IMG/VR virus record: IMGVR_UViG_3300023174_000042
Coordinates: 186,001 to 250,000 of that record
DNA length: 64,000 nt
Strand: one strand, 5' to 3'
In this document: piece by piece, positions 7,029 to 40,916 of the stretch
How the letters are laid out: the number at the start of each line of letters is the position of its first letter
Position numbering within the stretch: position 1 is the first letter of the stretch
Made by a program: the position numbers and the translations under genes
Notes under the pieces: model-generated
Told to the model about the DNA's origin: nothing
Seen by the model: the letters and a program-made list of their open reading frames with translations, nothing else
The model's database searches: none

Positions 7029-8518
7029 ATAATATCACCATTTTTTGTGATTTTAGTTTCGTTAAGTCCGTCTTTAAAAATTAAATTTCCTCTTGTTGAT
7101 AATCCTATCAATCTTGTTCTTGGATTTTGTTTAATATAATTCAAAGAAACATCTAATTGATTTCCTGATTCAGAAAGTCTAATAACATTTTCTTTATTTT
7201 GTTTGTAAAGTTGGTTTGTCTTAGTTTCTTTTGATTTTTGATAGTTATTGTTGTCATCTTCATTTGTAAGAAAATATTTTGACAAAACTTTATCTACTTT
7301 GGATTCGGCAAAAGTCCCATGTTCAAATCTATCAACATTGGGATAATTTTTTCTTCCCCTTCTTCTTTCTCTGTGATATTCGTCTTGATCATCAAATTCG
7401 TTATCAAAATGATGTGTCATAGACTCAGTTTTTTCGCCTTGCATATTTCTGATTGCGATATTAGAATATGCCCCACCTAATAGGTCTTGGAATGCGTCGC
7501 CAAAATTGTCATATCCTTCGGCCATTTCAGGTTCTTGTGGTGGTTCAGGAGCCACATCTTCATTACCCATTTCAGGTTCTTCTATTTTTTTCTTTCTAAC
7601 TTTTATTTCTTCTTCATCTCCTTTTTCTTCACCTTCTTCTTCAACCCCCTCAAGTTTAGAAATAATTTGTTCAATATCGTCTTCGTCTAAAGCATCAACA
7701 TCAATCGCAGATAAAATAGAGTTAATAATATATTTTATGTCTTTAGCGTCCAATTCTTTTTCTTCCTCATACGATCTTATTTTTTGGGCTAACTTACCTG
7801 TTAAAATTTGTATTCTTTTAAGTTCTGATACCTTTTTTTCTTTTGGTTTTTCTTCAACATCAACTTCTTCCTCTTCTTCTTCTCCTCCCATATCAGGTGC
7901 CGGCATTGGTTGTTCTTCTCCTCCCATATCAGGAGCCGGTTCTTCCATTGGTGATCCTCCCATATCAGGAGCCGGTTCTTCCATTGGTGATCCTCCCATA
8001 TCAGGTGCTGGCATTGCTTGTTCTTCTCCACCCATATCAGGTGCGGGAGCAGGTGCTTCTGGTGCGGGTTCAGGAGCAGGAGTTGCGGGAGCGGGTTCTG
8101 TGGTTTCTGATTCAGGACCTTCCGTTGTTTTTGGTTTTTTACTTTTCAGTATGAACTTTTTTTTTTGCTCCCCTAAAAGTGGTGTCCCTTCTTCATTTTC
8201 AAAAAGAGTATTAATTTCTTTTGTCATTAGATTTAATCTCTTTAATGCTTGTGAATATGAAGAATAATATTTTCTTCCTTTAATATTGTCTATGTATTCA
8301 GTTTCAGACTCATTAATAGTTTTTTTAATGATATATCCTTGTCTTTCTTTGATAATCTCATAAGAATTACCATCCGCCAAACTGATTTTATACTCACTTG
8401 ATTGAATATCATTATTTCTTTGTGGGATATTTTCATTATAACGAGCAATTTCCATTATTCGTCTTAATTTGTCTGTTCCTTGAAGTTTTTCACTTCCGAT
8501 AGGTTTAATTCCTGCCAT
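7025..8518 (-). CDS. acidic Pro-rich repeat protein, possible prohead core or scaffold-associated protein
   Basis: 497 aa, Glu-rich, five PAPDMGG repeats, multiple xxE motifs; lies in the head gene cluster. Confidence 0.55.
   Translation of the reverse strand: MAGIKPIGSEKLQGTDKLRRIMEIARYNENIPQRNNDIQSSEYKISLADGNSYEIIKERQGYIIKKTINESETEYIDNIKGRKYYSSYSQALKRLNLMTKEINTLFENEEGTPLLGEQKKKFILKSKKPKTTEGPESETTEPAPATPAPEPAPEAPAPAPDMGGEEQAMPAPDMGGSPMEEPAPDMGGSPMEEPAPDMGGEEQPMPAPDMGGEEEEEEVDVEEKPKEKKVSELKRIQILTGKLAQKIRSYEEEKELDAKDIKYIINSILSAIDVDALDEDDIEQIISKLEGVEEEGEEKGDEEEIKVRKKKIEEPEMGNEDVAPEPPQEPEMAEGYDNFGDAFQDLLGGAYSNIAIRNMQGEKTESMTHHFDNEFDDQDEYHRERRRGRKNYPNVDRFEHGTFAESKVDKVLSKYFLTNEDDNNNYQKSKETKTNQLYKQNKENVIRLSESGNQLDVSLNYIKQNPRTRLIGLSTRGNLIFKDGLNETKITKNGDII
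7883..8047. repeat. coding tandem repeat (~36 bp unit) encoding PAPDMGG...
   Basis: Recurring cccatatcagg(a/t)gc core, with two identical cctcccatatcaggagccggttcttccattggtgat units. Confidence 0.85.
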
Positions 8519-10749: not shown

Positions 10750-12792
10750 ATGTTAGAATTTATGGACGAAGGAAATGACAAATCTAAAAAAAAGAGTGAT
10801 AGCACAACTCCTGTTTTAGATAATTTTAGTAAAGACTTGAATAAGTTAGCACAAGAAGGAAAATTGGATCCTGTTATCGGAAGAAAAAAAGAAATTTTAA
10901 GAATTGCTCAAATTCTTTCAAGGAGGAAAAAAAATAATCCAATCATAATCGGTGAACCTGGAGCAGGAAAAACGGCAATTGTAGAAGGTTTAGCAATGAT
11001 GATTCATAATGGTGAATGTCCCAAAAATCTTATGGATAAAAGAATTGTATCATTAGATATGAATTCATTAGTTGCCGGAACTAAATACAGAGGTCAATTT
11101 GAAGAAAGAATGAAAGTAATTATTGAAGAATTACAATTGGCTCCAAATATTATTTTATTTATAGACGAAATTCACACCATTGTAGGAGCAGGAAATAGTT
11201 CAGGTTCGTTAGACGCTTCAAACATCTTCAAACCAGCACTTTCAAGAGGAGAAATTCAGTGTATTGGTGCCACAACACTTGACGAATACCGAACAAACTT
11301 TGAAAAAGACGGAGCGCTTGAGAGACGTTTTCAGAAAGTTATAGTTGATCCATCTTCAAAAGAAGAAACATTAGAAATTTTAATGTTAAGTAAATCAAAA
11401 TATGAAGATCACCATAAAGTTACCTATGATGAAAATACTTTAAAAATATTCGTTGAATTAGCAGATCGTTATATCACAGACAGAGAATTTCCTGACAAAG
11501 CATTTGATATATTGGATGAGGTTGGAGCAAGAATGCAAATTGATGTTAAATTACCAAAAGAAATAGAAGATTTAAAAGAAGAAGCAAATAAAATCAAACA
11601 AGAAAAAATAGACGTAATTAAAAAACAAGATTACGAACAAGCGGCCGAACTTCGTGATCGTGAAAGAAATGTTATTTCTAAACTTGATTTAGAGAAGAAA
11701 AAATTTGAGGAATTTTTAAAAAATAGCAAACGAAACATACCGGAAGAACTAATTTATGAAGTAGTATCTAACATGACAAAAATTCCTATTTCTAATATTA
11801 ATGTTGATGAAAAAAATAATTTAATTAATTTGAGTTCAAATTTGAATTCGAAAGTTATTGGTCAAGAAATTGCTGTTAACAAGATTTCAAAAGCAATCAG
11901 AAGAAACAGAATGGGAATCAAAGACCCAAATAAACCGATCGGTTCGTTTATATTTTTGGGGTCAACTGGTGTTGGTAAAACTTATTTAGCAAAACAATTA
12001 GCAAAAGAAATCTTTGGAAGTCCTGATAATATGATTCGAGTTGATATGAGTGAATACCAAGAAAAACACACAATATCGCGGCTTATTGGATCACCTCCAG
12101 GGTATGTTGGTCATGATGATGGGGGTCAATTAACAGAACAAGTAAAAAACAAACCTTACTCTGTTATATTATTTGACGAGATAGAAAAAGCACACAAAGA
12201 CATTTTCTCAACACTTCTTCAGTTGTTAGATGATGGTCATATTACAGATTCATTAGGTCGTAAAATTAACTTCAAAAATTGTTTAATTATTATGACTTCC
12301 AACATTGGAGTAAAAAAATTACAAGATTTTGGAACTGGAGTTGGTTTCAAGACCACAAAAAGTGATGTCGTTTTAGAAGAAGAAAAACAAGACGTTTTGA
12401 AAAAAGAACTAAAAAAGTTTTTTGCACCTGAGTTTTTGAATAGAATTGACGATGTTATTATTTTCAATAGTTTAGAAAAAAGTCATATTGATCAAATTAC
12501 AAAACTTGAAATTGATAAACTATTAAGTAGAGTTTTAGAAAAACATTATATCTTTTCTTACAACGATGATTTAATTGAATATATTTCTAAAGTAGGTTTT
12601 GATGAAACCTTTGGAGCAAGACCAATCAAGAGAGCAATTCAAGAAAAAATTGAAGATTTAATTTCAGAAAAAATATTAATGTCGGAAATTGAAGAAAATA
12701 AGGAATATGTTTTCAAAGTTGAAAATGATGAAATCATCGTAGTTGAAAAAGAAGAAAAACCAAAAAAAAGAAGTAGGAAAAAAAGCGAATAA
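10750..12792 (+). CDS. clpC: ClpC-type AAA+ chaperone lacking the N-terminal Clp repeat domain
   Basis: LDPVIGR, Walker A GEPGAGKT and GSTGVGKT, pore loops AGTKYRG and GYVG, UVR middle domain QDYEQAAELRD, ClpP-docking-type VGF loop, FGARP. Confidence 0.93.
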   Translation: MLEFMDEGNDKSKKKSDSTTPVLDNFSKDLNKLAQEGKLDPVIGRKKEILRIAQILSRRKKNNPIIIGEPGAGKTAIVEGLAMMIHNGECPKNLMDKRIVSLDMNSLVAGTKYRGQFEERMKVIIEELQLAPNIILFIDEIHTIVGAGNSSGSLDASNIFKPALSRGEIQCIGATTLDEYRTNFEKDGALERRFQKVIVDPSSKEETLEILMLSKSKYEDHHKVTYDENTLKIFVELADRYITDREFPDKAFDILDEVGARMQIDVKLPKEIEDLKEEANKIKQEKIDVIKKQDYEQAAELRDRERNVISKLDLEKKKFEEFLKNSKRNIPEELIYEVVSNMTKIPISNINVDEKNNLINLSSNLNSKVIGQEIAVNKISKAIRRNRMGIKDPNKPIGSFIFLGSTGVGKTYLAKQLAKEIFGSPDNMIRVDMSEYQEKHTISRLIGSPPGYVGHDDGGQLTEQVKNKPYSVILFDEIEKAHKDIFSTLLQLLDDGHITDSLGRKINFKNCLIIMTSNIGVKKLQDFGTGVGFKTTKSDVVLEEEKQDVLKKELKKFFAPEFLNRIDDVIIFNSLEKSHIDQITKLEIDKLLSRVLEKHYIFSYNDDLIEYISKVGFDETFGARPIKRAIQEKIEDLISEKILMSEIEENKEYVFKVENDEIIVVEKEEKPKKRSRKKSE

Positions 12793-15377: not shown

Positions 15378-16409
15378 ATGAATATAGAAAAATTTAAAGA
15401 ACTCTTATCTGTCCCAACCAAGACTTATAAAGAAAGTAAAATGGTTGAATACATATTGTCAGTTCTTGAGGGTATGGAAGGTGTGATTTATAACTACGAT
15501 GATCATAATAACATATACGCAACAAAAGGCTCATTAGAAGATGACGAGTTTTATCCCATGTTTATTTCTCATACAGACACGGTTCATGAACTTGTTGAAA
15601 AAATAGTTGTTAAAGAAGAACAACTTGTTCGCCCATTTACATTTGGAAAAGATTTCGGAAAAGATCAAGTTTTATGTTTAAAAGCATATGATAAAGATGA
15701 TAAACCAACAGGAATTGGTGGTGATGACAAATGTGGAATTTATATTTGTTTGGAACTTCTATCTCAATTAGACAAAGTTAAAGTGGCATTTTTTGTTTCA
15801 GAAGAAACGGGTTGTCACGGATCAAAATTTGTTGATAAAGAGTTTTTAAAAGACGTTGGTTACTGCGTTCAATATGACGCACCAGGAGATCATTTAATTT
15901 CTCAATCTTGTTTTGGAACCACTTTATTTGATAAAGAAGGAGAGTTTTTTAAATTATCACTTGAAGCGATCACAAAAGGGTTTGGTAATGAAATGATGGT
16001 TCAGTCTCATCCATATACCGATATTATGATGATTAAACAACAATCTGATCTATCTTGTATCAATATGTCATGTGGTTATTATAATATGCACACAGCAAAC
16101 GAATTTGTTTGTATCGATGACGTTCAAAGAGCAATTGAATCAGGAAAAAACATGGTAAAAGATCTTGGTTTAAAAAAATATGAATTTAAATATAATGAAC
16201 CAAAACCAACAAAATCTTTACTACCGTTTGATGATTTCGATGAAAACCCATTTTATGATGATGTTCATCAATTAACTTCGATTGACATAATTGAAGATAA
16301 AGATGGTATTATAATCTCGGATATATACGATGAAAACCAATTTTTTATTGATGATGAAGATGGTTACAAATTATATGAGATTTTAAAAGAACGTTATCGT
16401 CTTAATTGA
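15378..16409 (+). CDS. M20/M28-family zinc peptidase
   Basis: Metal ligands SHTDTV, GGDDKCG, EETG and the C-terminal GYYNMHTANE; TATATTTG promoter. Confidence 0.85.
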   Translation: MNIEKFKELLSVPTKTYKESKMVEYILSVLEGMEGVIYNYDDHNNIYATKGSLEDDEFYPMFISHTDTVHELVEKIVVKEEQLVRPFTFGKDFGKDQVLCLKAYDKDDKPTGIGGDDKCGIYICLELLSQLDKVKVAFFVSEETGCHGSKFVDKEFLKDVGYCVQYDAPGDHLISQSCFGTTLFDKEGEFFKLSLEAITKGFGNEMMVQSHPYTDIMMIKQQSDLSCINMSCGYYNMHTANEFVCIDDVQRAIESGKNMVKDLGLKKYEFKYNEPKPTKSLLPFDDFDENPFYDDVHQLTSIDIIEDKDGIIISDIYDENQFFIDDEDGYKLYEILKERYRLN

Positions 16410-17527
16410 CCTGGATCAATTCTAAACTCAGTTGGGTTAAATAAACCTGGCTGAGTTACCATTTGAATTACCTCATTAGCAGACGCCAAACCATATTTAC
16501 GATCACCAAAATAACTACCTGAACCGATTAAATATTTTACCTTTAATGTTTCAGGATCAACTGACTCCACTTTTATAAATAAATTTTTTTGACCTGGAAT
16601 TTCTTTTCTATAAAATAAATTCAAAGATGAAAGCTTATCTATAATTTTTCTAAATTCAGAAGAAAATTCTTCTTGGGCTCTTTCTATATATTCATCAATC
16701 AAATCAACTAATTTTTCACAAGACTCAGATTCAAACATTTCATCATCCATTACATAATATTCCATTTCGTAATGTTCAGGAAGACCATGTATAAATTTTT
16801 TATATATTTTTTGAATTAATACGTCAAGAACTTTTCCATCAAATTCACCATCTTCAATAAATAACTGTACCAGATTACCCCAACTTATAAAGTATAATCC
16901 AAAACACCACTTACCCCATTTTTCAACTCCAAACTGACTAAGTGTTTCACAATATTCTTTTTCGATTGCTTCTTTAGCTCCCGATTCAGTTGCATTCGCT
17001 TTAGCAGAACATATAATCTCATCTATTTCATCTGCAATATGTTGAAAGTATTTGTCTAATACACTTGTAATCGCACCTTCATCATCAATTCTACCGTTTT
17101 CATGAATATTATCAACAAGGTTAGGTGAGATTATTTTAAGTAATTCTTTTAATCTGATTTTTGCTTCACGACAAAGATATCCTAAAGTATATCCCTCACT
17201 CCAATCGTCGTATGCTCGATCTTGACACTCACTATAAAAATCATAAGAACCATAATACATACGATCATAGTTAATAGCATCCCACTCACCGTCAGTTCCT
17301 TCTTCAAATGTAGGATAATGAAAAAACTTTAAAAACTGTTCTAAATCATCAAAATCAAATAATAGACCATCAGGTTTTACTTGAACATGATTTAAGTTCA
17401 AACCTTCATGATTATCACTTTTGAATTCAACATCATCGGAAGACAACTTTCTTTTATTTAAAAGAAGAATTTTTTGAAAGTCCGTCATTTCTGAAACATC
17501 ATTTTCTACTAAAAGTCTTTTTTTCAT
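16394..17527 (-). CDS. acidic hypothetical protein with a short tag
   Basis: 377 aa; starts MKKRLLVE; TATTTATA upstream. Confidence 0.75.
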   Translation of the reverse strand: MKKRLLVENDVSEMTDFQKILLLNKRKLSSDDVEFKSDNHEGLNLNHVQVKPDGLLFDFDDLEQFLKFFHYPTFEEGTDGEWDAINYDRMYYGSYDFYSECQDRAYDDWSEGYTLGYLCREAKIRLKELLKIISPNLVDNIHENGRIDDEGAITSVLDKYFQHIADEIDEIICSAKANATESGAKEAIEKEYCETLSQFGVEKWGKWCFGLYFISWGNLVQLFIEDGEFDGKVLDVLIQKIYKKFIHGLPEHYEMEYYVMDDEMFESESCEKLVDLIDEYIERAQEEFSSEFRKIIDKLSSLNLFYRKEIPGQKNLFIKVESVDPETLKVKYLIGSGSYFGDRKYGLASANEVIQMVTQPGLFNPTEFRIDPGQLRR

Positions 17528-17594
17528 ATATTTATAAATATATTGGATAATACAAATCTTTGTATTATATTTGTATAGAAGTTATTTGACATAT

Positions 17595-18002
17595 GGGCCT
17601 ATATCGGAATTGACGGGCGTTGGTTGAATAAAAGAAGCATGTAGGGACTAAGTTAATCTCTTTAAAAACTGACTTAGAAAACAACTGGCAATGTGCTAAA
17701 CAAAATGGAAACTCTTGGTTTACTAAGAGGTTCTGAAGTTACTGTAGCTTAAGAAGTTTACGGAAACGCGAGCCGGTTCACATACGCTCAGGAACAGAAG
17801 TGATGAAGGTGAAATACAACTGAACCATAAATCGAGTTGTCTATTGGTTTTTAATTTACGATAGTGAAGAACAAATTAAAATTGTTTTTGATCAAGTAAA
17901 AATCAAATATTTTGGGGTATTAGAAAATACCAACCTAAACATGTAGTTGTCTTTTAGACAAAACGAGCCGGACGAGGGAGTCGGAGCCCTCTAGGTCCAC
18001 CA
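17595..18002 (+). ncRNA. ssrA: tmRNA
   Basis: 5' GGGCCTA pairs with 3' TAGGTCC-A-CCA, giving the G3:U70 Ala identity pair; GGAATTGAC D-loop analog; internal tag ORF at 17687-17752; TATATTTG promoter upstream and terminator downstream. Confidence 0.93.
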
Positions 18003-18007
18003 ATTGA

Positions 18008-18040
18008 TCCCACTATTTAATTATGGTGGGATTTTTTTTG
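18008..18040 (+). terminator. intrinsic terminator after tmRNA
   Basis: ATCCCAC...GTGGGAT hairpin followed by a T run. Confidence 0.75.
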
Positions 18041-18059
18041 TGCCTTAGTTTTAAAGCAT

Positions 18060-18095
18060 AAAAAAAGGGATCAATTGATCCCTGAATTTTTTTTG
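18060..18095. terminator. bidirectional terminator
   Basis: A-tract, GGGATC-AATT-GATCCC hairpin, T-tract, between convergent RNA genes. Confidence 0.7.
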
Positions 18096-18132
18096 CCGGT
18101 TTTTGCTCCATTTCTAAAAAAGAAAAATAAAA

Positions 18133-18940
18133 ACGCTGAGATTACACGTCGTGTTTGAGAACCTTTAGAGTCATTATTGTTTCTACTCTTATCCACTTTC
18201 TTTTGGAAAGTATTTCTCAGTGCTGGTTATTTAGGTGAACCACTCCTTGAGATCTTATCTACTCTCTTACTACTCGATACTCTTCGAGGATGCCTCCCCA
18301 ATTGATCCTTGCGGGACTAGAGATCTTTTGTAAAACTACACTCGGTCTTGGGAACCTAATGTGCCACGGACAACCCGTGACTAAGTAAGCACCTTTCAAC
18401 AAGATCTGACGGACACTTTTCCTTATTTATAATTAATTGTTTAATGATAATTAAGTTTTGTGTCGTGGATTGTCGAAGTAGTGGTCCGCCACCAGAGCCA
18501 ACCCATCTTTTGAACGAGTCGATACTCAACTACTCCGTGAAATGTCCCCATTTCCATACTTCAAGAACTCTTCGAATTATTACCTTGGTGGGTAATTAAT
18601 AAGGACGATGTCAGCACCACCTGTTACTCATCTTGTCTTTCGACGTTAAGATTCCTTTGATATTGGAACTCGCAATTAAAGTGTTGGAGCACTTAGTTTT
18701 GCAAAAATCCCTACGAGTTATTCCTATTGGTGTCCCCACCTCAATTAGACGACCCACATCGCCCAATCATCTAACCACTTTCCCTACAGCGTCGCCCTCG
18801 GTACTAAAGGTTAAACGGTATCCCGCTTGTGTACTCGACCTCAATTATCCGAAGACAACTAAGACGCAAACCATATAACACAAATGGTTCACTTTATCCC
18901 ACTTTCGTGGTTTATTTTAATGGACCATACACGGCCCAAT
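18133..18940 (-). ncRNA. large structured ncRNA, GOLLD-like
   Basis: ~810 nt, GC-richer than its flanks, no credible ORF, dense hairpins with GNRA loops on the minus strand (CCAC-GAAA-GTGG, GTC-GAAA-GAC, TCCC-GCAA-GGA); own promoter and boxA. Family assignment rests on size and context only. Confidence 0.65.
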
Positions 18941-19022
18941 ATCTTCATCAATCAAAGAAGAGAATTCCATCTCAATTACTTGCCAAATAATCTGACAAAA
19001 CTTATCATGAACGGATAGTCAT

Positions 19023-19094
19023 TTTTTCAAAGAACGTTATCGGACGTTTCCGATTTGTTTTACAAAGATAGGACATTTATTTTAATTTGTCAAA
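19023..19094 (-). promoter_or_regulatory. Bacteroidetes sigma-A promoter plus boxA-like element for the large ncRNA
   Basis: Minus strand TTTGACAAATTAAAATAAATGTCCTATCTTTG (-33 TTTG, -7 TAnnTTTG), followed by GTTCTTTGAAAA. Confidence 0.75.
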
Positions 19095-19115
19095 CTTTTC
19101 TTTCACTTTTTTTTT

Positions 19116-19205
19116 GGTGGTTTCGGATTTTTACCGAAGTTAAGGAAGTTTACGTTTCCTTTTACAACCTCACGTTAGGCTTGTGTTTCATACACTCCCA
19201 CCCCC
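19116..19205 (-). ncRNA. candidate small multibranch ncRNA
   Basis: GGTGG...CCACC closing stem around four short hairpins, immediately after a TATATTTG promoter. Confidence 0.45.
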
Positions 19206-19235
19206 AAATTGTTCTACAAATATAAATACTTTATT

Positions 19236-19412
19236 TTAATTAATCAAGTTTTTTAACTCAATTTTTTCAACAAAAACATTATCTGTCCCTTCTTTACTTG
19301 CTCTAAGTTGAGCGAACATCAAATTGGATGTCCAAAGTTTAATTCCGTTTACCATATAATAATACATTTCAACTTCTTTAACTTCTGTTAATTGTTTAAT
19401 TTCTTCGTTCAT
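19236..19412 (-). CDS. small hypothetical protein (58 aa)
   Basis: Manually translated MNEEIKQLTEVKEVEMYYYMVNG...; below the ORF-track length cutoff. Confidence 0.5.
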   Translation of the reverse strand: MNEEIKQLTEVKEVEMYYYMVNGIKLWTSNLMFAQLRASKEGTDNVFVEKIELKNLIN

Positions 19413-19468
19413 TTGTTTATTTATTACAATTGAAATGATAGTGTTTTAATTTTGTTAAGTCAAATATC

Positions 19469-20770
19469 TTAGAGAACTTTTTTCATGATATTTTTTATAT
19501 TATGGATTTCATAAATTAATTCTTCATTTATTTCTTTTACTTTTGAAGTTGAAATTGCTGGAGGTGCAATATTTTTTGTCGTCAACGTTCTTTTGATACC
19601 TTCACCAGTTCCCCATTTTTTTAAATCTGAAGAACAATTCGTTGCTATGTTTATTGCTCCAATATCTTTCTTTAATCCATTCACAATACAACCATAATTA
19701 CCATTCATCAAAGTTTGAGCCGTGGCATCAATACCATCAGACTCAGATTTATAATTTCTAACGCCACCTAAACATTTTCCTTCTTTTCTTTTTAAACAAT
19801 TCCAAAAAGAAGATCCTTCTTTTTTTTGTGTTGTATTAAAAGGGTTAAATGTTGATTTAGCACCTTCGGCTTGTCTCCATGCGTAAAAAAATAATAAATT
19901 TTGTGGTGACTCAGGTGCCCCAATTTTTTTTAACACTTGAGAGTAAAACTCATCATCTGTTTGTGCGGGTTTTGTTATTTTATAATCACTTATAGACGTT
20001 GTTTGACTTGTTTGACTTGATTGGTCAGAATCTAATGTTTGCTCTTCTTTAGATGACACAGAAGTGGTCGGTTGATCTTTAAATCCAAAAAACTTTTTCC
20101 ATTGATCACTACCTTTTGAAACACGGTCACTAATACCAAGACTTGAAGTAATCTGACTTACAAAATCGTTAATTGAAAAATCTTTTGTTTTTTTATCTTG
20201 ACTTGATTGACTTGATTGATCTTGACTTGATGTATCATCAGATTCAGGTGCTGAAGTATCTACAGTGATTTTTTCTTTCAAATATGAGTCACAATTTTTG
20301 TCTCTGTTTGGTCCTGATCCACAGAATGTAAAATGCCAAGGTTCTCCAACCGCCTTTCCCTCTCCCCATGTCCAACCATATTTTTCTCCATTCTCTTTAA
20401 TCCATTTTTGAACGTTTGATGGCGATATATCAATTGCTCTACCCCATCCGTGATTTGAACTTCCAGGATAAGCCGCCGCAGTTCCTGCTGTCCCCTTTTT
20501 TCTTTTTTTTCCCGTTTTTTCATAATGGTCAAAATCAAAAATTTTACACTGAACATTCAAAGGTCTATAAGAATCTGATAATTTAACTGAACTTTTTATT
20601 TCACTTGGCATATCAGAATACATTTTTATAAATGCGTTTGCTGCGTCTGTTTGTAATTTATGATTACCAATACCAAGAGATTTTAGTTGGGAATTACTAA
20701 TACATCCACTCGCATCTCCAAAACCTGAGCATGGATCGGAAGAACTACAAGCCGATTTTGTAACTTTCAT
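19469..20770 (-). CDS. two-domain peptidoglycan hydrolase (M15B/VanY-like peptidase plus lysozyme-like domain)
   Basis: SYR...AAYPGSSNHGWGRAID...EPWH (M15B); Ser/Gln linker; AWRQAEG...FNPFNTT...GVRNY C-terminal domain. Confidence 0.8.
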   Translation of the reverse strand: MKVTKSACSSSDPCSGFGDASGCISNSQLKSLGIGNHKLQTDAANAFIKMYSDMPSEIKSSVKLSDSYRPLNVQCKIFDFDHYEKTGKKRKKGTAGTAAAYPGSSNHGWGRAIDISPSNVQKWIKENGEKYGWTWGEGKAVGEPWHFTFCGSGPNRDKNCDSYLKEKITVDTSAPESDDTSSQDQSSQSSQDKKTKDFSINDFVSQITSSLGISDRVSKGSDQWKKFFGFKDQPTTSVSSKEEQTLDSDQSSQTSQTTSISDYKITKPAQTDDEFYSQVLKKIGAPESPQNLLFFYAWRQAEGAKSTFNPFNTTQKKEGSSFWNCLKRKEGKCLGGVRNYKSESDGIDATAQTLMNGNYGCIVNGLKKDIGAINIATNCSSDLKKWGTGEGIKRTLTTKNIAPPAISTSKVKEINEELIYEIHNIKNIMKKVL

Positions 20771-20791
20771 ATAAATAAATACTCTGTTATT

Positions 20792-21259
20792 TCAAAACCA
20801 TTCAGGAATTTCTCTATTTTTCCATTTAGCAAACTCTTTTTTTGCCCCACGATAATAATTTCTGTAGGATTCTACCACATCACCAACTTTATATTCGTCA
20901 GGCATTGCTTTAGGTGGTGTGGTGAAGTTTTTATCTGCGATATTTGGTTTATTAGACAAGCACCATTCTATAACATCTTGTGACTTGTGTCTTTTACCAT
21001 AACGATATGTATATTCTTTACACAACTCTAAACCAAGATCACATAAATAAAGATAATTAGATAATGACTCACGAACCCATATGGCACAAGGATGATTTTT
21101 ATGTGATAACTTGTAGGGAACTTGGGGGGTAACTTGGGGGGTCATATGGTGAACTCCACATAAAAGTTGTGCGGTTTCCAATATCATTTTAACAACGTGT
21201 TTATCGCAATGATATTTAGCACATTTATTAGTGTCAAAATCCAAAAAGAAAATGTTCAT
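20792..21259 (-). CDS. pyrimidine-dimer DNA glycosylase / endonuclease V-like family protein
   Basis: MNIFFLD...CDKHVVKMILETAQLL...HKNHPCAIW...EYTYRYGKRH. Confidence 0.75.
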   Translation of the reverse strand: MNIFFLDFDTNKCAKYHCDKHVVKMILETAQLLCGVHHMTPQVTPQVPYKLSHKNHPCAIWVRESLSNYLYLCDLGLELCKEYTYRYGKRHKSQDVIEWCLSNKPNIADKNFTTPPKAMPDEYKVGDVVESYRNYYRGAKKEFAKWKNREIPEWF

Positions 21260-21282
21260 ATCACAAAGATATGAAATGTTAT

Positions 21283-21885
21283 TTACTTATTCAAATAACT
21301 CATTAAAACACCACCAACGGAGGAAGCATGAACTAACAGATGATTTACAGATTCAATATCTAAAACGGTTTTCTTTTTTGTGTAATCGACCGAAAGAATA
21401 CCTATAAACTTATCTTCAATTGTTTTGATAGCAAATAAATAAGACGATTTAGATCCACATTCTTCTGCAATGTATTTAAGACCAAAAGTTGCAACTTTTT
21501 CGTCTTTGAAGTCTGGAATTTGAATAATATCGTTTTGGTAAAGTTCGTTAATTGCTTTTGAAAAAAGTTGGACTGGTATATTTTGAAAACTTGTCTGAAT
21601 AGATTGTGCGTTTGCTCCGACTGATTCATAAACAATAGAAAATTTAGCCATAGACTTTCCTGTTGGATAAAAATTTCCACCATTGTGAAATTGTGAAATC
21701 CAAACACGATCTGCTTTGAATTCTTCTTTGATATGATCAATTTTTTGATTCACTAACTCGCTCACTCTAAGAGTGTCGGTAACCATATCAGGTTTTTTCT
21801 TATTTTTGTTTAATAAATTTTTTATAAGTAGAATACTAATTGGTCCCAAGACTCCAGTAATAAATGCAATTATAATCTCTGCCAT
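21283..21885 (-). CDS. membrane-anchored GAF-fold protein, possible T4 gpT-like holin
   Basis: Probable start MAEIIIAF at 21885; single N-terminal TM helix, then ADRVWISQFHNGG...IGILSVDY; near the PG hydrolase. Confidence 0.6.
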   Translation of the reverse strand: MAEIIIAFITGVLGPISILLIKNLLNKNKKKPDMVTDTLRVSELVNQKIDHIKEEFKADRVWISQFHNGGNFYPTGKSMAKFSIVYESVGANAQSIQTSFQNIPVQLFSKAINELYQNDIIQIPDFKDEKVATFGLKYIAEECGSKSSYLFAIKTIEDKFIGILSVDYTKKKTVLDIESVNHLLVHASSVGGVLMSYLNK

Positions 21886-21948
21886 ACAAATTATTTTATA
21901 CAAATAAATATCCCCCACTTTTATAAAATAGGGGATACTTTTTTTTCT

Positions 21949-22122
21949 TTAGGCTTTGTTTTTAGAAATAACTGACCAAATTGTTCCTGTTAGTGTTATA
22001 ACACCACCCACAATTTCAGTCACAGTAGTCTCATCAATAAGACCTTTCATTACTAAAATACCACCAATAAAGGTAAGGGCATGTCTTGTAATTCCTAAAA
22101 TTTGTTCTTTTGTAAGTTTCAT
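21949..22122 (-). CDS. small two-TM holin-like protein (57 aa)
   Basis: MKLTKEQILGITRHALTFIGGILVMKG...IVGGVITLTGTIWSVISKNKA; not in the ORF track; TATTTAT upstream. Confidence 0.7.
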   Translation of the reverse strand: MKLTKEQILGITRHALTFIGGILVMKGLIDETTVTEIVGGVITLTGTIWSVISKNKA

Positions 22123-22374
22123 TTTATTAAAGTTTTAATTTTAATTTTTTTAATAAATACTTAACATAAAAAAAATTATTAAATAAATTTTATTTTACAA
22201 TTTTTTTCTATTGTCATTTACTGTTGCTAAAATTAAAACAGTAACAAAGACAACAATTGGAATTGATACTGCGATGATTGTTTCTATACTCATAATTTAA
22301 TTTTTTTAATTGACGAACAAAAAATAAAAACTCTTTTTGCAAATGATTATTCACTATTATTGATAGAGCAAAGT

Positions 22375-22812: not shown

Positions 22813-22848
22813 TTTTTTTCTTTTTTTTTAATTAAACAATATTTTTTG

Positions 22849-22935
22849 CGGTCTCGAAGGGAGTCGAACCCTCTTTTTCGTTTACCTACTTGCTACCGTG
22901 ACAGGGTAGTGCACCAACCATTATGCGCCGAGACC
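22849..22935 (-). tRNA. tRNA-Asp(GTC) with an unusually long variable region
   Basis: Acceptor GGTCTCG/CGAGACC, G73, anticodon arm CTACC-CTGTCAC-GGTAG, T-loop TTCGACT, ~19-nt variable region. Confidence 0.85.
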
Positions 22936-27450: not shown

Positions 27451-27465
27451 ATATTTTACATTTAG

Positions 27466-27550
27466 CAGAGGAGGAGGGATTCGAACCCCCGGATCCGTAA
27501 AGATCAACGGTTTTCAAGACCGCCTCATTCGACCGCTCTGACACTCCTCT
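27466..27550 (-). tRNA. tRNA-Ser(TGA)
   Basis: GCGGT-CTTGAAA-ACCGT anticodon arm, long variable arm GATC-TTTACG-GATC, G73. Confidence 0.93.
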
Positions 27551-27588
27551 AACATTTTCAAAGAACACTAACCTACTTGATAAGTATA

Positions 27589-38468: not shown

Positions 38469-40916
38469 TTATCTGATAAGTGTGAAATTTCCTAAAAACT
38501 CTTTAACTTCATCAGTTTTAGGAGATTTAAACCTTAATTTCCAAGTATATATCCCATCTTGACACATAAAATTGTTATAAGTCCCATCCCAACCTTCATA
38601 GGGATTAAAAGATTCCCAAATAATTTGACCCCAACGATTATAAATAACAAAAGTATAGTTAAAAATGTCCACACCACTAGTAATTACTGGTTTAAGTATA
38701 TTATTTCTTTCATCACCGTCAGGAGTAAAGGCATTTGGTATGTAAAATATTTCATTTGGACACAATTCTAAAGTAATTGTAAAGTTTTCTGGGTTAGAAA
38801 CACAACCATTATTCCATCTAACCCCTTGAAAAGTAAAAATTCCATCTGTATTCCATGTATGTGTTAATATATTTGAAGTAATTGTGTCTCCAAACACATA
38901 CCATTGGTTAAAACCTCCCCCAACTGACGATAAATTAAAGAAATCTGTTAGAGTGTCTCCTTCACAAATTTGATGATAAGTAAAATTTTGATCAGAAATA
39001 CCGTTTGTAATTGGTAAAACACTTGGTCTTGGGTAAACTTGAACATGAATGGAATCAAAAAACCAACATCCCGATTGATTATACATGTAATAAACGGTAT
39101 CAATACCAATAAATCCGTTATCAGGACAATATTGACTATTCCAAACATTCAAACCATTAAAAATTCCACCTTGAGGAGTTGCATTTAGGTTAATACAGTT
39201 ATTGTATTCGCAAAACGGACCCATAGGTGTTATATTTGGTATAACATTTAAGTCGTAAATTGTAAAAGTTTGTGGTTGAGATTGACAACCCAACTGATTA
39301 ACACCAATAACTGATAAAGTATTTGCGTAAAGTCCGCTATTTACACCTGAAACATTTAAGTTTATTGAATTTGGAGATTGACCTAAAGTTATAACCCCAA
39401 TTTGTGAAGTCCAATTATATGTTAAATTTAAAAAATTACTTGTAACGTTGTATAAATTACTTGTAGAATTGAAACACACTGTATCAAATCCAGTTATTGG
39501 GTTGATTGTAACTTGTGGTGGGTTATTTAATGTTGTTGTTTGATTAGAAACACACCCATTTAGGTCAGTAACAACAACAGAATAGTTTCCAAAACATAAA
39601 TTAGTCGCTGTTTGTGTTGTTTGACCATTACTCCATAAATAAGTATAAGGAGCAAGACCACTTATAGGGTTAACTGTTGCAGATCCATTACAATCATTAA
39701 AACAAACAGGATCTGTTGGCGTAATTGTTGGTTGTTGTAATGGTGGTGGATTATTTAAAGTTGTTGCTCCATTATAAACACAGCCGGATCCATCAGTTAA
39801 TGTAAATGTATAGTTTCCCGAACAAAGGTTATTTAAAGTTAATGTGTTTCCACCCATATTCCAAATAATATTAAATGGTTGAGTCCCCCCAATAGGAGTA
39901 ACAACAACAGATCCGTTGCAACCATTATTACACAAAGGATCAATTGGTGTAATTGTAGGGGGTGGTAAATTAGGGGTTAAAGTGACATGAATTGTGTCAG
40001 GACCTAACCCTACACCAACATTACAAACGGACCACCCAGCATTACAAGTTGGATATACAGGAATACAAGTATAATACGCTCCTTGTGGTGGAGGATTTAC
40101 AACTATTGATAAACCCGTTCCAATTGAATTAACATTTCCAACCTGAAACCACGTATAAGTCGGAGTTACAGTTGGTCCTTGTGGTGTATAACGATAAGAG
40201 TTATTAATTGTCGACCATTGTGTTGAATTTCTTCCTGGAACTGTAACTGCTGACGTTCCTAATAAATCGTGAATACCTTGAACTGCGGTTCCTCCTGCCC
40301 ACTGCGGACAATTTGGTTTATTTGCAATATGATTTTCAATAATGTTTGTTGATTCATATATTACAATATGAAATGTTCCTTGTAGATTAGTGCATGAAAA
40401 CATTGGGACTCCGACCCAACTAACAACTAATTTTCTACAAGGAGCTGTTCCTGAAACTTGATATTTAATTTGACCTCCAAGACCAGGATTCCAATCTTGC
40501 CAAGGTCCCATAATACAATTTTTTGGTATTGTAATTCCAGCATTCGGAATAGACGCTGATGTAAAAGTTGTTGGCTGATTTGAACTAAATGAAATCCACC
40601 CATTAGACCCGATATAAAATTGATTATAAGTCTGACCATAAAAACAAAAATTAAAACCAATGTTAAATGGACCTGTTTGCGAATCATCGGTTAAAAAAAC
40701 GTTTGTTCCTGTATTATTTTGAGCAACATAAGGGATATTTGTTACTCCGTAAGATGTGGTTTGTTTTGGTTGAGATCCAGGTCCACACTGAGATAAGTCG
40801 GCCGTTAATGTTGTTTGATTTACACCACAAGGTAAAGTTAAATCAGGCCCTAAATACGGACAATACTGTGAGTATATAAAAAGGGGAAACAAAAATAGAA
40901 TTAATAATTTTTTCAT
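38469..40916 (-). CDS. SprB-repeat adhesin with T9SS type-B (gliding-motility-associated) C-terminal domain
   Basis: Signal peptide; SprB-like repeats (C...CNGS..V...GG..P...W...L..G-Y...TD..GC); CTD YIPNAFTPDGDERN...IYNRWG...GWDGTY...GIYTW...FTLIR. Confidence 0.9.
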   Translation of the reverse strand: MKKLLILFLFPLFIYSQYCPYLGPDLTLPCGVNQTTLTADLSQCGPGSQPKQTTSYGVTNIPYVAQNNTGTNVFLTDDSQTGPFNIGFNFCFYGQTYNQFYIGSNGWISFSSNQPTTFTSASIPNAGITIPKNCIMGPWQDWNPGLGGQIKYQVSGTAPCRKLVVSWVGVPMFSCTNLQGTFHIVIYESTNIIENHIANKPNCPQWAGGTAVQGIHDLLGTSAVTVPGRNSTQWSTINNSYRYTPQGPTVTPTYTWFQVGNVNSIGTGLSIVVNPPPQGAYYTCIPVYPTCNAGWSVCNVGVGLGPDTIHVTLTPNLPPPTITPIDPLCNNGCNGSVVVTPIGGTQPFNIIWNMGGNTLTLNNLCSGNYTFTLTDGSGCVYNGATTLNNPPPLQQPTITPTDPVCFNDCNGSATVNPISGLAPYTYLWSNGQTTQTATNLCFGNYSVVVTDLNGCVSNQTTTLNNPPQVTINPITGFDTVCFNSTSNLYNVTSNFLNLTYNWTSQIGVITLGQSPNSINLNVSGVNSGLYANTLSVIGVNQLGCQSQPQTFTIYDLNVIPNITPMGPFCEYNNCINLNATPQGGIFNGLNVWNSQYCPDNGFIGIDTVYYMYNQSGCWFFDSIHVQVYPRPSVLPITNGISDQNFTYHQICEGDTLTDFFNLSSVGGGFNQWYVFGDTITSNILTHTWNTDGIFTFQGVRWNNGCVSNPENFTITLELCPNEIFYIPNAFTPDGDERNNILKPVITSGVDIFNYTFVIYNRWGQIIWESFNPYEGWDGTYNNFMCQDGIYTWKLRFKSPKTDEVKEFLGNFTLIR

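What the first reader, a model, noticed from the sequence alone, without database searches (positions are those of the whole stretch)
18133..18940. ~810-nt ornate ncRNA convergent with tmRNA (GOLLD-like or new)
Seen: a long ORF-free, GC-elevated stretch packed with stems and minus-strand GNRA loops, with its own promoter, boxA-like site and terminator. Known: GOLLD RNAs are ~800 nt, occur in phages and lake metagenomes, often lie near tRNA genes, and have unknown function. If it does not match GOLLD it is a new large RNA.
Basis: partly seen in the sequence, partly recalled or inferred. Interest (0 to 1): 0.72.

Follow-up and report, generated by a model that had tools for sequence, protein, structure and literature searches.

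The report
GOLLD RNA gene in lake phage
The ~810-nt structured stretch is a full-length, expressed copy of the already-known phage GOLLD RNA (a giant RNA that self-assembles into a hollow cage and whose function is still unknown), here preceded by a ribosomal-RNA-style boxA leader and facing a phage tmRNA gene.

Summary
Rfam's GOLLD model, which covers only the conserved 3' domain, matches window 18537-18133 (minus strand) end to end at 309 bits (threshold 150). The upstream half (18940-18538) is the GOLLD 5' domain. Its signature motif sits at a fixed distance from a GOLLD 3' domain in all 113 testable IMG/VR contigs, 74 of 97 predicted pairs show compensatory changes, and it aligns block by block with the cryo-EM-solved env-38 GOLLD. 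Contigs from four freshwater metatranscriptomes cover 18095-18919 and leave most of the flanking coding DNA, including the adjacent 433-aa ORF, uncovered. The host genome is a 272.6-kb T4-like freshwater phage, probably infecting Bacteroidota. Three points go beyond the finding. First, a conserved promoter-hairpin-boxA leader: GTTCTTTGAAAA occurs only twice in the genome (GOLLD leader, tRNA-Ser), precedes 87 of 103 GOLLD loci, and matches the rRNA-operon boxA of Bacteroidota and other bacteria. Second, a phage tmRNA lies downstream of 53 of 140 GOLLD loci, convergent in 44. Third, GOLLD, the tmRNA and the tRNA array share one promoter type. The function of GOLLD remains unknown. This is a known family with modest new context.

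The parts
18130..18940 (-). GOLLD RNA core (about 810 nt): 5' domain, P14 hairpin, linker and 3' multi-stem domain
   Evidence: Rfam hit. Conservation starts at about 18940. RNA contigs cover 18095/18129-18919.
18538..18940 (-). GOLLD 5' domain (equivalent to env-38 residues 1-420, the cage 'cap')
   Evidence: The motif at 18914 is coupled to a 3' domain 366-406 nt downstream in 113/113 contigs. 97 pairs, 74 with compensatory changes. Block-by-block match by eye to the env-38 sequence.
18133..18537 (-). GOLLD conserved 3' domain (Rfam RF02032, model positions 1-416)
   Evidence: 309.4 bits, E 1e-87. 76 pairs, 97% of cells paired.
18408..18472 (-). AU-rich variable linker between the first 3'-domain hairpin and the enclosing helix (equivalent to the disordered, inward-facing linker of env-38); no tRNA embedded
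Evidence: No tRNA call here. Role taken from PMC12286853.
18638..18641 (-). GAAA loop on a short stem (CGUC-GAAA-GACA), the L11a-like conserved tetraloop
   Evidence: GAAA in 52 of the 53 homologues listed; the stem covaries GUC/GAC, ACC/GGU, GCC/GGC.
18307..18315 (-). L21a-like loop CCCGCAAGG with the self-complementary GC dinucleotide (intermolecular kissing contact B8 in env-38)
   Evidence: Homologues carry either GCAA or UCGA, that is GC or CG, the same switch reported in PMC12286853.
18113..18147 (-). Terminal hairpin (CGUGUAAUCUCAGCG) followed by a U-rich run; probable 3' end
   Evidence: End of the Rfam model. The X6 RNA contig stops at 18129 and the X8 contig at 18095. A U-run follows the same hairpin in the huge-phage homologues.
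18941..19057 (-). Conserved 5' leader with three hairpins and the boxA element
   Evidence: Alignment of upstream regions of 12 close relatives; the hairpin arms change in a compensatory way by eye. The thermodynamic fold is not exceptional. One RNA contig (X18) spans 18888-19195 at lower depth.
19024..19035 (-). boxA-like element GTTCTTTGAAAA
   Evidence: Two copies in 272.6 kb, 0.14 expected. GTTCTTTGA lies upstream of 42/51 non-redundant and 87/103 distinct GOLLD loci. The same sequence lies in rRNA leaders and ITS.
19039..19054 (-). Hairpin AUCGGAAACGUCCGAU directly 5' of boxA (in the boxB position)
   Evidence: Arms vary as CAGGAAA..CCUG and UCGGAAA..CCGA among relatives.
19063..19094 (-). 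Proximal promoter: TTTG (19094-19091), 20-nt spacer, TATCTTTG (19070-19063); also scores as TTGACA-17-TATCTT
   Evidence: Conserved in close relatives. The TANNTTTGTA class is enriched and correctly placed upstream of genes.
19215..19224 (-). Second, distal promoter-like copy TATATTTGTA
   Evidence: The X18 RNA contig reaches 19195 and then runs into adapter sequence.
18066..18083 (.). Bidirectional terminator hairpin in the convergent gap between the tmRNA and GOLLD
17595..18002 (+). Phage tmRNA, convergent partner; tag ORF 17687-17752 (GNVLNKMETLGLLRGSEVTVA*); own terminator 18006-18033
   Evidence: Rfam 64.9 bits, gathering score 47. Translation. Similar tags in L014 and L047. Terminator.
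27555..27566 (-). The only other genomic copy of GTTCTTTGAAAA, 4 nt upstream of tRNA-Ser (27465-27550)

Best explanation
Window 18940-18130 (minus strand) encodes a full-length GOLLD RNA of a 272.6-kb T4-like freshwater phage. SHOWN: it matches the GOLLD covariance model. Its 5' half is the covarying GOLLD 5' domain of the env-38 type. It is present in RNA libraries as contigs that span both domains, while the neighbouring protein-coding DNA is almost entirely absent from them. INFERRED from conserved sequence: transcription starts at a Bacteroidota-type promoter (TTTG-N20-TATCTTTG, about 19057), with a second copy about 155 nt further upstream. It then runs through a roughly 115-nt leader carrying a hairpin followed by an rRNA-type boxA (GUUCUUUGAAAA). 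By analogy with rRNA operons, that boxA would load the host NusB/NusE (S10) antitermination complex, so that RNA polymerase can complete this long, untranslated, highly structured RNA without Rho-dependent termination. Transcription would end at the terminal hairpin and U-run (about 18129-18095), backed up by a bidirectional terminator shared with the convergent tmRNA. INFERRED by homology with env-38 (PDB 9MEE): the two domains fold separately, and about 14 copies (D7) assemble through kissing loops and A-minor contacts into a hollow RNA-only cage with the AU-rich linker pointing inwards. The self-complementary L21a GC, the L21b hairpin and the L11a GAAA loop are all present. SPECULATIVE: the cage acts in the phage's takeover of translation or stable-RNA metabolism. 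GOLLD shares its promoter type and boxA with the phage tRNAs and sits beside the phage tmRNA, but what the cage binds or encloses is unknown.
For: Identity: RF02032 at 309.4 bits, model 1-416, single copy in the genome.
5' domain: the motif-to-3'-domain spacing is fixed in 113/113 contigs. 74/97 pairs show double changes. 97% of cells are paired against 78% in shuffles and about 40% in slid controls. Invariant G-U pairs fix the strand. Blocks are shared with the env-38 sequence.
Expression: contigs from four metatranscriptomes in three studies cover 18095-18919 at depth 10-58. One 744-nt contig crosses the domain boundary. Depth is zero over 19255-21618 in three of the four runs (X17 has one faint bin, 0.76) and over 16300-17087 in all four.
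Leader: promoter, hairpin and boxA are conserved in relatives. The 12-mer occurs twice in 272.6 kb, both times upstream of stable-RNA genes on their strand. It precedes 42/51 and 87/103 GOLLD loci against 0.009 per 400 nt background. The same motif is the rRNA leader/ITS boxA: 32/122 sense against 0 antisense in GTDB genomes, and it is present in most sampled Bacteroidota rRNA leaders and ITS.
Cage features: GC/CG switch in L21a and conserved GAAA; structural roles from PMC12286853 and PMC12990946.
Phage and host: T4-type portal, SprB/CHU_C protein, TAnnTTTG promoters.
Against: No experiment exists on this RNA, so oligomer state, ends and function are inferred. The RNA evidence is Logan contigs, not reads: there is no strand information and no exact 5' or 3' ends, and the runs were chosen because they contain GOLLD words. 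The contigs stop at 18917-18919, about 20 nt short of the conserved 5' start. One lower-depth contig runs upstream to 19195, so the mature 5' end and which promoter is used are open. The homologue set was gathered with exact patterns, so conservation of those patterns is by construction, and many loci are related phages, so counts are not independent events. The leader fold is not thermodynamically unusual (z = 0.04). Flavobacterium rRNA leaders carry a different boxA variant (GTTC[A/C]TAGACA), so the host match holds only at phylum level. boxA function (Nus binding) is untested, and about 16% of GOLLD loci, including the Acinetobacter phage, lack the exact motif. The 14-mer stoichiometry could differ: the S. 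agalactiae GOLLD forms 12-mers.
Confidence: 0.9

Rival explanations
1. A new class of large ornate RNA unrelated to GOLLD.
For: Rfam's model covers only half of the element, so the 5' 400 nt has no Rfam match.
Against: The 3' half matches over the full model at twice the gathering score. The 5' half is always coupled to a GOLLD 3' domain and matches the 5' domain of the solved env-38 GOLLD.
Confidence: 0.01
2. A composite: only 18133-18537 is GOLLD, and 18538-18940 is a separate RNA or regulatory element that merely lies upstream.
For: The two GOLLD domains fold independently, and the 5' domain is variable across the family (PMC12286853). RNA unitigs break inside the 5' domain.
Against: A 744-nt RNA contig runs continuously from 18095 to 18838 across the boundary. 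The spacing is fixed in 113/113 loci. No promoter or terminator lies at the junction. The env-38 RNA with the same 5' domain is a single 833-nt chain in the cryo-EM structure.
Confidence: 0.03
3. The conserved GTTCTTTGAAA element is not an antitermination boxA. It could be an RNase processing signal for stable-RNA precursors, a binding site for a phage protein, or a decoy that titrates NusB/NusE away from host rRNA operons.
For: It sits only 4-25 nt in front of several tRNA genes, closer than a typical antitermination site and where 5' processing occurs. The abundant GOLLD precursor could act as a sink. Nothing here tests Nus binding.
Against: The sequence is identical to the boxA of rRNA leaders and spacers in many bacteria, including Bacteroidota. 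It lies at a similar distance, 17-99 nt upstream of the structured RNA against 82-147 nt for the sampled Bacteroidota 16S leaders (32-204 nt across GTDB). It follows a hairpin as in rRNA leaders. A long untranslated RNA is exactly the substrate that needs protection from Rho.
Confidence: 0.3
4. GOLLD and the tmRNA are linked only by shared ancestry of a phage lineage (a frozen gene order), not by function. The convergent arrangement is incidental.
For: The loci come from related freshwater phages. 84 of 140 GOLLD loci show no tmRNA in the fetched flank, 51 of them with at least 1.5 kb of downstream flank. GOLLD occurs without a tmRNA in the Acinetobacter phage locus examined here and, per the literature, in Lactobacillus and Mycobacterium.
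Against: The pairing persists over GOLLD divergence below 70% identity and over gaps of 113-3400 nt, with the orientation kept in 44 of 53. Both genes use the same promoter type.
Confidence: 0.55

Closest known systems
GOLLD RNA, env-38 (marine metagenome; cryo-EM 14-mer, PDB 9MEE; Kretsch et al. 2025, PMC12286853)
   Same: Same family and the same overall architecture: a roughly 420-nt 5' domain with shared sequence blocks, a P14 hairpin with a UCAAAAG loop, an AU-rich linker, and a 3' multi-stem domain with L21a/L21b hairpins and a terminal hairpin. Total length is about 810 nt against 833 nt. Both are from phage or environmental DNA.
   Different: Sequence is only partly conserved in the 5' domain. 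env-38 lies just downstream of a tRNA-Met, whereas here the nearest tRNA is 3.9 kb upstream and the immediate neighbour is a convergent tmRNA. The oligomeric state of this RNA is not measured.
GOLLD RNAs of Lactobacillus brevis prophage, Streptococcus agalactiae (12-mer, PDB 9L0R) and Mycobacterium tRNA arrays
   Same: Same Rfam family, association with phages or prophages, and proximity to stable-RNA genes.
   Different: Those versions have reduced or different 5' domains (Sag lacks P9, P11a-c and P21b), some carry a tRNA inside the linker, and their hosts are Gram-positive or Actinobacteria. This one has the full env-38-like element set and no embedded tRNA.
ROOL RNA (Rfam RF03087; 8-mer nanocage)
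   Same: A large phage-associated RNA near tRNA islands that forms an RNA-only cage.
   Different: Unrelated sequence and fold. No Rfam match here, even at E<=1.
rRNA operon leader (promoter, boxB-like hairpin, boxA, then large structured RNA; NusB/NusE/NusA/NusG/SuhB antitermination)
   Same: The GOLLD leader has the same order of elements. Its boxA core is identical to that found 82-147 nt upstream of 16S and in the ITS of sampled Bacteroidota, and in Bacilli, Mesorhizobium, Nitrospira and others.
   Different: It lies on a phage genome in front of a non-ribosomal RNA. No leader-trailer helix was identified. Function is untested.

Membership tests
GOLLD RNA (Rfam RF02032) | Covariance-model score at or above the curated gathering score (150 bits) over the conserved 3' domain | tested here: met
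   309.4 bits, E 1.2e-87, model 1-416 of 416, not truncated (repeated).
GOLLD RNA (Rfam RF02032) | 3'-domain secondary structure maintained by covariation | tested here: met
   76 pairs, 97.3% of cells paired against 74.5% in shuffles. 60 pairs show double changes against a mean of 45 (maximum 50) in shuffles.
GOLLD RNA (Rfam RF02032) | A second, less conserved, structured 5' domain of about 400 nt on the same transcript, giving a total of about 800 nt | tested here: met
   Fixed spacing in 113/113 loci. 97 pairs, 74 compensatory. A 744-nt RNA contig crosses the boundary. Shared blocks with the env-38 5' domain, by eye only.
GOLLD RNA (Rfam RF02032) | Variable single-stranded linker after the first 3'-domain hairpin | tested here: met
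   18472-18408, AU-rich, unpaired and poorly conserved.
GOLLD RNA (Rfam RF02032) | Conserved contact loops of the cage: L21a with a self-complementary GC or CG, L21b, and L11a GAAA | tested here: met
   CCCGCAAGG (GC), with UCGA (CG) in other homologues. The GGGGAGGCAUCCUC hairpin is present. The GAAA loop is conserved in 52 of the 53 homologues listed. Assignment to the published loop names is by position and sequence, not by a structure-based alignment.
GOLLD RNA (Rfam RF02032) | Encoded by phages or prophages, commonly near tRNA genes | tested here: met
   The genome is an IMG/VR virus record with a T4-type portal. Six tRNAs lie 3.9-9.4 kb upstream on the same strand. About one third of the homologous loci scanned have a tRNA within a few hundred nt of GOLLD (by-eye tally).
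GOLLD RNA (Rfam RF02032) | Self-assembly into a homo-oligomeric RNA-only nanocage | not testable with these tools
   Needs mass photometry or cryo-EM of the transcript. Inferred only from homology to env-38.
GOLLD RNA (Rfam RF02032) | Transcribed, with high levels during phage production | tested here: inconclusive
   Present in four freshwater metatranscriptomes with nearly all flanking DNA uncovered. There is no time course, no strand information, and the evidence is contigs only.
ROOL, OLE, group I/II introns, other Rfam large RNAs | Covariance-model match | tested here: not met
   No such match in 17400-19400 even at E<=1. Only sub-threshold noise from small sRNA models appears in the terminator region.
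rRNA-type boxA antitermination site | Sequence identical to the boxA found in rRNA leaders and 16S-23S spacers, in sense orientation upstream of a stable RNA | tested here: met
   GTTCTTTGAAAA at 19035-19024. A 14-mer containing this core (TGTTCTTTGAAAAC) is sense-oriented next to 16S in 32/122 random genomic instances against 0 antisense, and the core is present in most sampled Bacteroidota rRNA leaders and ITS.
rRNA-type boxA antitermination site | Binds NusB/NusE and confers terminator or Rho read-through | not testable with these tools
   Biochemical or reporter assay required.

The most novel reading that the evidence does not exclude
GOLLD genes are built like miniature rRNA operons: promoter, hairpin, rRNA-type boxA, then a large structured RNA. 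In a large group of freshwater phages they form a conserved convergent pair with a phage tmRNA and share promoter and boxA with the phage tRNA genes. On this reading GOLLD belongs to a phage 'stable-RNA / translation takeover' module that depends on, or competes for, the host Nus antitermination machinery. That would give the first concrete, testable handle on GOLLD biology. I found no paper in the searchable library that links GOLLD with boxA, antitermination or NusB, or that reports a GOLLD-tmRNA gene linkage. The original 2009 description and the 2020 Mycobacterium paper could not be read, so prior description cannot be excluded.
Probability: 0.3. Interest if true: 0.65.

Novelty: new member of a known kind. 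Interest (0 to 1): 0.4.

Why it matters
The RNA itself is a textbook GOLLD of the 'lake-derived' kind, so the finding mainly confirms a correct call. GOLLD is nonetheless one of the largest bacterial or phage non-coding RNAs with a solved structure and no known function. The context recovered here turns a vague 'near tRNAs' association into specific experiments. That context has four parts: an rRNA-type boxA leader present at most GOLLD loci; the same boxA in front of phage tRNAs; a recurrent convergent tmRNA partner; and selective abundance in lake metatranscriptomes. The experiments are whether GOLLD synthesis requires Nus factors, whether it competes with host rRNA transcription, and whether the cage interacts with tmRNA, tRNAs or ribosomes.

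Tried and rejected
ARAGORN did not call the tmRNA, although Rfam and tag similarity support it.

Megablast of 20 kb of context against GenBank phages found only tRNA-sized matches, so no close cultured relative exists.

Full-text searches for the boxA sequence gave only noise or nothing.

The Weinberg 2009 and Morgado 2020 papers are not held, so I could not check whether the leader or boxA was described before.

The four Bacteroidota MAGs reached from the boxA scan have no 16S. Flavobacterium rRNA leaders carry a different boxA variant, so Flavobacterium is not supported as the specific host; the phylum-wide sample does show the motif.

An exact env-38 5'-domain pattern has no match in IMG/VR. 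The comparison with env-38 is therefore by eye from the paper's supplement, not a tool alignment.

The leader fold energy is no better than that of shuffles. No SmpB gene is present in the phage genome. No other Rfam family fits the 5' half.

Small ORFs inside the element (at most 81 aa) were not pursued, because covariation and G-U pairs explain the conservation.

Complex prediction and protein-structure tools were not used: they are irrelevant to an 810-nt RNA.

Full report
OBSERVATION. ORFs wholly inside it are at most 81 aa, and it lies in a 1.7-kb gap (17528-19235) between protein-coding ORFs. GC rises to 0.39-0.44, against 0.24-0.33 in the flanks and 0.302 for the genome. The stretch lies tail to tail with a tmRNA gene at 17595-18002 on the plus strand (Rfam 64.9 bits, gathering score 47).

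IDENTITY. Rfam's GOLLD model (RF02032) matches 18537-18133 on the minus strand at 309.4 bits, E 1e-87. The match covers all 416 model positions without truncation. No other Rfam family matches 17400-19400, even at E<=1.

The window is positions 186001-250000 of a 272,576-bp IMG/VR virus record, 93% complete, with a single GOLLD copy. That record encodes a T4-type portal protein.

THE 5' HALF. blastn found the two 634- and 642-kb 'huge phage' genomes and several Acinetobacter phages. All three loci checked carry RF02032 matches. In the huge phages, similarity extends across the whole 5' half and begins at about window 18940.

A 23-nt motif from the 5' half (TAAACCNNGAAANNGGGATAAAG, window 18914 on the minus strand) occurs in at least 119 IMG/VR contigs. 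In every contig with enough downstream sequence (113 of 113, counting the two GenBank huge-phage loci, a few contigs from the 3'-pattern scan and the window itself), nhmmer finds a GOLLD 3' domain. That domain starts 366-406 nt and ends 768-822 nt downstream of the motif.

I aligned 55 non-redundant homologues (below 93% identity) with the window.
- RNAalifold predicts 97 pairs in the 5' domain, 74 of them with compensatory double changes.
- Over the full length there are 171 pairs with 97.2% of cells paired. Column shuffles give 77.6% (maximum 78.3%) and slid partners give 37-44%.
- 133 pairs show double changes, against a mean of 99 (maximum 109) in shuffles.
- Several invariant G-U pairs, which would be C-A on the other strand, fix the functional strand as minus.

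The sequence of the cryo-EM-solved env-38 GOLLD, printed in the supplement of PMC12286853, shares the same ordered blocks with the window. The blocks run from its first nucleotides (ATGGCCGCTATGGTC... against window GGGCCGTGTATGGTC...) to the start of the 3' domain (...GGGTAGTTAAGTATT...GTTCAAAAG). This comparison is by eye: I could not pass that sequence to a tool, and an exact env-38 pattern has no match in IMG/VR.

Loops that the structure papers single out are present. The L21a-like loop is CCCGCAAGG (18315-18307), with GC here and UCGA/CG in other homologues, the same GC/CG switch reported as evidence for an intermolecular kissing contact. A second hairpin sits in the L21b position. A GAAA loop (18641-18638) is conserved in nearly all homologues (roles). 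The linker (18472-18408) is AU-rich and contains no tRNA.

EXPRESSION. The sequence is held by lake and freshwater metagenomes and by several freshwater metatranscriptomes. I laid the Logan contigs of four RNA runs (three studies) on 16300-22200.
- All four runs cover parts of 18073-18919 at word depth 10-58.
- One contig is a continuous 744-nt piece spanning 18095-18838 with one mismatch.
- Over 19255-21618, which includes the adjacent 433-aa ORF, three runs have zero depth and X17 has one faint bin (0.76). Over 16300-17087 all four are at zero; X17 also has a 153-nt contig at 17142-17294 (depth 2.4).
- The tmRNA is barely seen.

This pattern argues for an abundant stable RNA rather than DNA carry-over. 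The caveats are that contigs carry no strand or exact-end information, and that the runs were selected for containing these words. One contig ends at 18129 followed by non-templated UU plus A9 in the sense orientation. One lower-depth contig extends upstream to 19195 and then reads into adapter. A co-occurring variant with a diverged 143-nt segment (18567-18709) appears in three runs.

TRANSCRIPTION SIGNALS. I aligned the upstream regions of twelve close relatives. They share a conserved unit with these parts:
- TTTG(AC), about 20 nt, then TA(T/A)CTTTGTA (window 19094-19063; also scored as TTGACA-17-TATCTT);
- a hairpin (19054-19039) whose arms change in a compensatory way;
- the invariant block CGTTCTTTGAAAAA;
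- two further covarying hairpins, then the GOLLD core.

The window and its nearest relative have a second promoter copy (TATATTTGTA, 19224-19215). TANNTTTGTA occurs 18 times in the window (9.5 expected). It sits upstream and in the correct orientation for the tmRNA (17566), GOLLD, the tRNA array (24442) and several ORFs. From my own knowledge, this resembles the Bacteroidota -33 TTTG / -7 TAnnTTTG promoter. The sampled Flavobacterium rRNA promoters show TACTTTTG. Together with a SprB/CHU_C type-IX-secretion protein and 30% GC, this points to a Bacteroidota host.

THE boxA ELEMENT. GTTCTTTGAAAA occurs exactly twice in the 272.6-kb genome (0.14 expected). One copy is in the GOLLD leader (19035-19024). 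The other lies 4 nt upstream of tRNA-Ser (27566-27555). Both are on the strand of the RNA gene.

The core GTTCTTTGA lies 17-99 nt upstream of the GOLLD 5' domain in 42 of 51 non-redundant homologues, against a background of 0.009 per 400 nt. It also lies there in 87 of 103 distinct loci, including loci gathered by a 3'-domain pattern. In loci where GOLLD is embedded in tRNA arrays, the motif instead sits about 20 nt upstream of individual tRNAs.

To test whether this is really boxA, I scanned GTDB genomes for TGTTCTTTGAAAAC. Of the 122 instances returned, 19 lie 32-204 nt upstream of a 16S start and 13 lie in the 16S-23S spacer. All of these are in sense orientation, against 0 in the antisense control. 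In a phylum-wide sample of Bacteroidota, most of 24 rRNA operons have GTTCTTTGA(A/T/C)A 82-147 nt upstream of 16S, and 18 of the 24 have GTTCTTTGACA in the spacer. The Flavobacterium genus has a divergent variant.

Its function here, loading of NusB/NusE and protection of a long untranslated RNA from Rho, is inferred by analogy with rRNA operons (for example PMC3177189 and PMC5725501, listed). It is not tested.

3' END. The last GOLLD hairpin is followed by a U-rich run, as in the huge-phage homologues, and RNA contigs stop at 18129 and 18095. A bidirectional terminator hairpin (18066-18083) and a tmRNA terminator (18006-18033) fill the rest of the 130-nt convergent gap.

tmRNA PARTNER. The tmRNA's tag reading frame gives GNVLNKMETLGLLRGSEVTVA*. 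This resembles the ARAGORN-called tags GNVYNNMEIAGLLATSKVAA and DNVYNTMEIAGLLATSKVAA next to other GOLLD genes.

Of 14 close relatives scanned with Rfam, 7 have a tmRNA convergent with GOLLD, at gaps of about 110-1400 nt. With an nhmmer profile, 56 of 140 GOLLD loci have a tmRNA in the fetched flank. In 53 of these it lies downstream of the GOLLD 3' end, and in 44 it is convergent. The phage has no SmpB. These loci are related phages, so shared ancestry may explain much of this. Still, the pair persists over large sequence divergence and variable spacing.

MECHANISM AND LIMITS. What is shown: family membership, two-domain covarying structure, presence in RNA pools, and conserved leader elements identical to the rRNA boxA. 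What is inferred: the TSS, Nus-dependent antitermination, the 3' end, and assembly into an env-38-like roughly 14-mer cage. What remains unknown: what the cage does. My committed reading is as follows. This is a phage stable RNA made by host RNA polymerase in rRNA-like antiterminated mode. It self-assembles into a nanocage and acts within the phage's tRNA/tmRNA translation-takeover module. I put about 0.97 on identity, about 0.6 on functional boxA antitermination, about 0.6 on a cage of 12-14 copies, and at most 0.3 on a direct functional tie to the tmRNA.

NOVELTY. GOLLD has been known since 2009, was originally found in lake metagenomes, and has solved structures. This copy is a new but typical member. 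The boxA leader and the tmRNA synteny may be new observations about the family. I found no paper combining GOLLD with boxA, antitermination or NusB, or reporting a GOLLD-tmRNA gene linkage, in the searchable library. The founding paper could not be read.

Noticed in passing
window 17595-18002 (+); tag ORF 17687-17752: Phage-encoded tmRNA that ARAGORN missed but Rfam detects. It has a 21-residue tag, GNVLNKMETLGLLRGSEVTVA, similar to tags of tmRNAs beside other GOLLD genes. The phage genome has no SmpB, so the tmRNA would depend on the host protein.
   Followed up: partly
IMG/VR loci L005-L172 (e.g. L033:4989-5396, L113:2084-2470, L160:2216-2622): A tmRNA gene lies downstream of the GOLLD 3' end in 53 of 140 GOLLD loci, and is convergent in 44 of them, at gaps of 113-3400 nt. 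I did not find this recurrent GOLLD-tmRNA pairing described in the searchable literature.
   Followed up: partly
window 27555-27566 (-); L005:3792, 5691, 7344; L084:4201, 6684, 8274; L026:5356, 2488; L116:1710: The rRNA-type boxA core GTTCTTTGA also sits 4-25 nt upstream of many of the tRNA genes in this phage and in the tRNA arrays of related phages, on the tRNA strand.
   Followed up: partly
window 10750-12792 (+): A 680-aa ClpB/ClpA-like double AAA+ ATPase (PHROG 'ATP-dependent protease', E 1e-236) is encoded about 5 kb from the tmRNA. A phage carrying both a tagging RNA and an unfoldase is suggestive.
   Followed up: no
window 38472-40916 (-): An 815-aa protein with SprB repeats, a PKD-like domain and a CHU_C type-IX-secretion sorting domain. 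Together with TAnnTTTG promoters and 30% GC, it points to a Bacteroidota host.
   Followed up: partly
window: 13405, 15355, 17566, 19061, 19215, 24433, 28373, 32167 and others: The promoter-like decamer TA(T/A)NTTTGTA occurs 18 times (9.5 expected). It is mostly intergenic and correctly oriented upstream of genes, including the tmRNA, GOLLD and the tRNA array.
   Followed up: partly
L171:7880-8277 and 8253-8474: In one relative, a group I intron match (Rfam 96 bits) abuts and overlaps the 3' end of the tmRNA match. This may be an intron-interrupted tmRNA or an adjacent intron-bearing gene.
   Followed up: no
window 18567-18709: Three metatranscriptomes contain a second GOLLD variant. It is identical on both sides, but this 143-nt segment of the 5' domain is replaced by a diverged sequence of the same length, indicating strain-level microdiversity or recombination within the RNA.
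   Followed up: no
window 18129 (RNA run X6): One RNA contig ends at 18129 and continues with non-templated UU plus A9 in the sense orientation. This could be a polyadenylated 3' end or a library artefact.
   Followed up: no
window 22848-22935 (-): The tRNA-Asp(GTC) call is 88 nt long, unusually long for a class I tRNA. It may carry an insertion or intron.
   Followed up: no
window 19472-20770 (-) and 20795-21259 (-): The genes immediately upstream of GOLLD on the same strand encode a VanY-type D-Ala-D-Ala carboxypeptidase-domain protein and a pyrimidine-dimer glycosylase (DenV-like).
   Followed up: no
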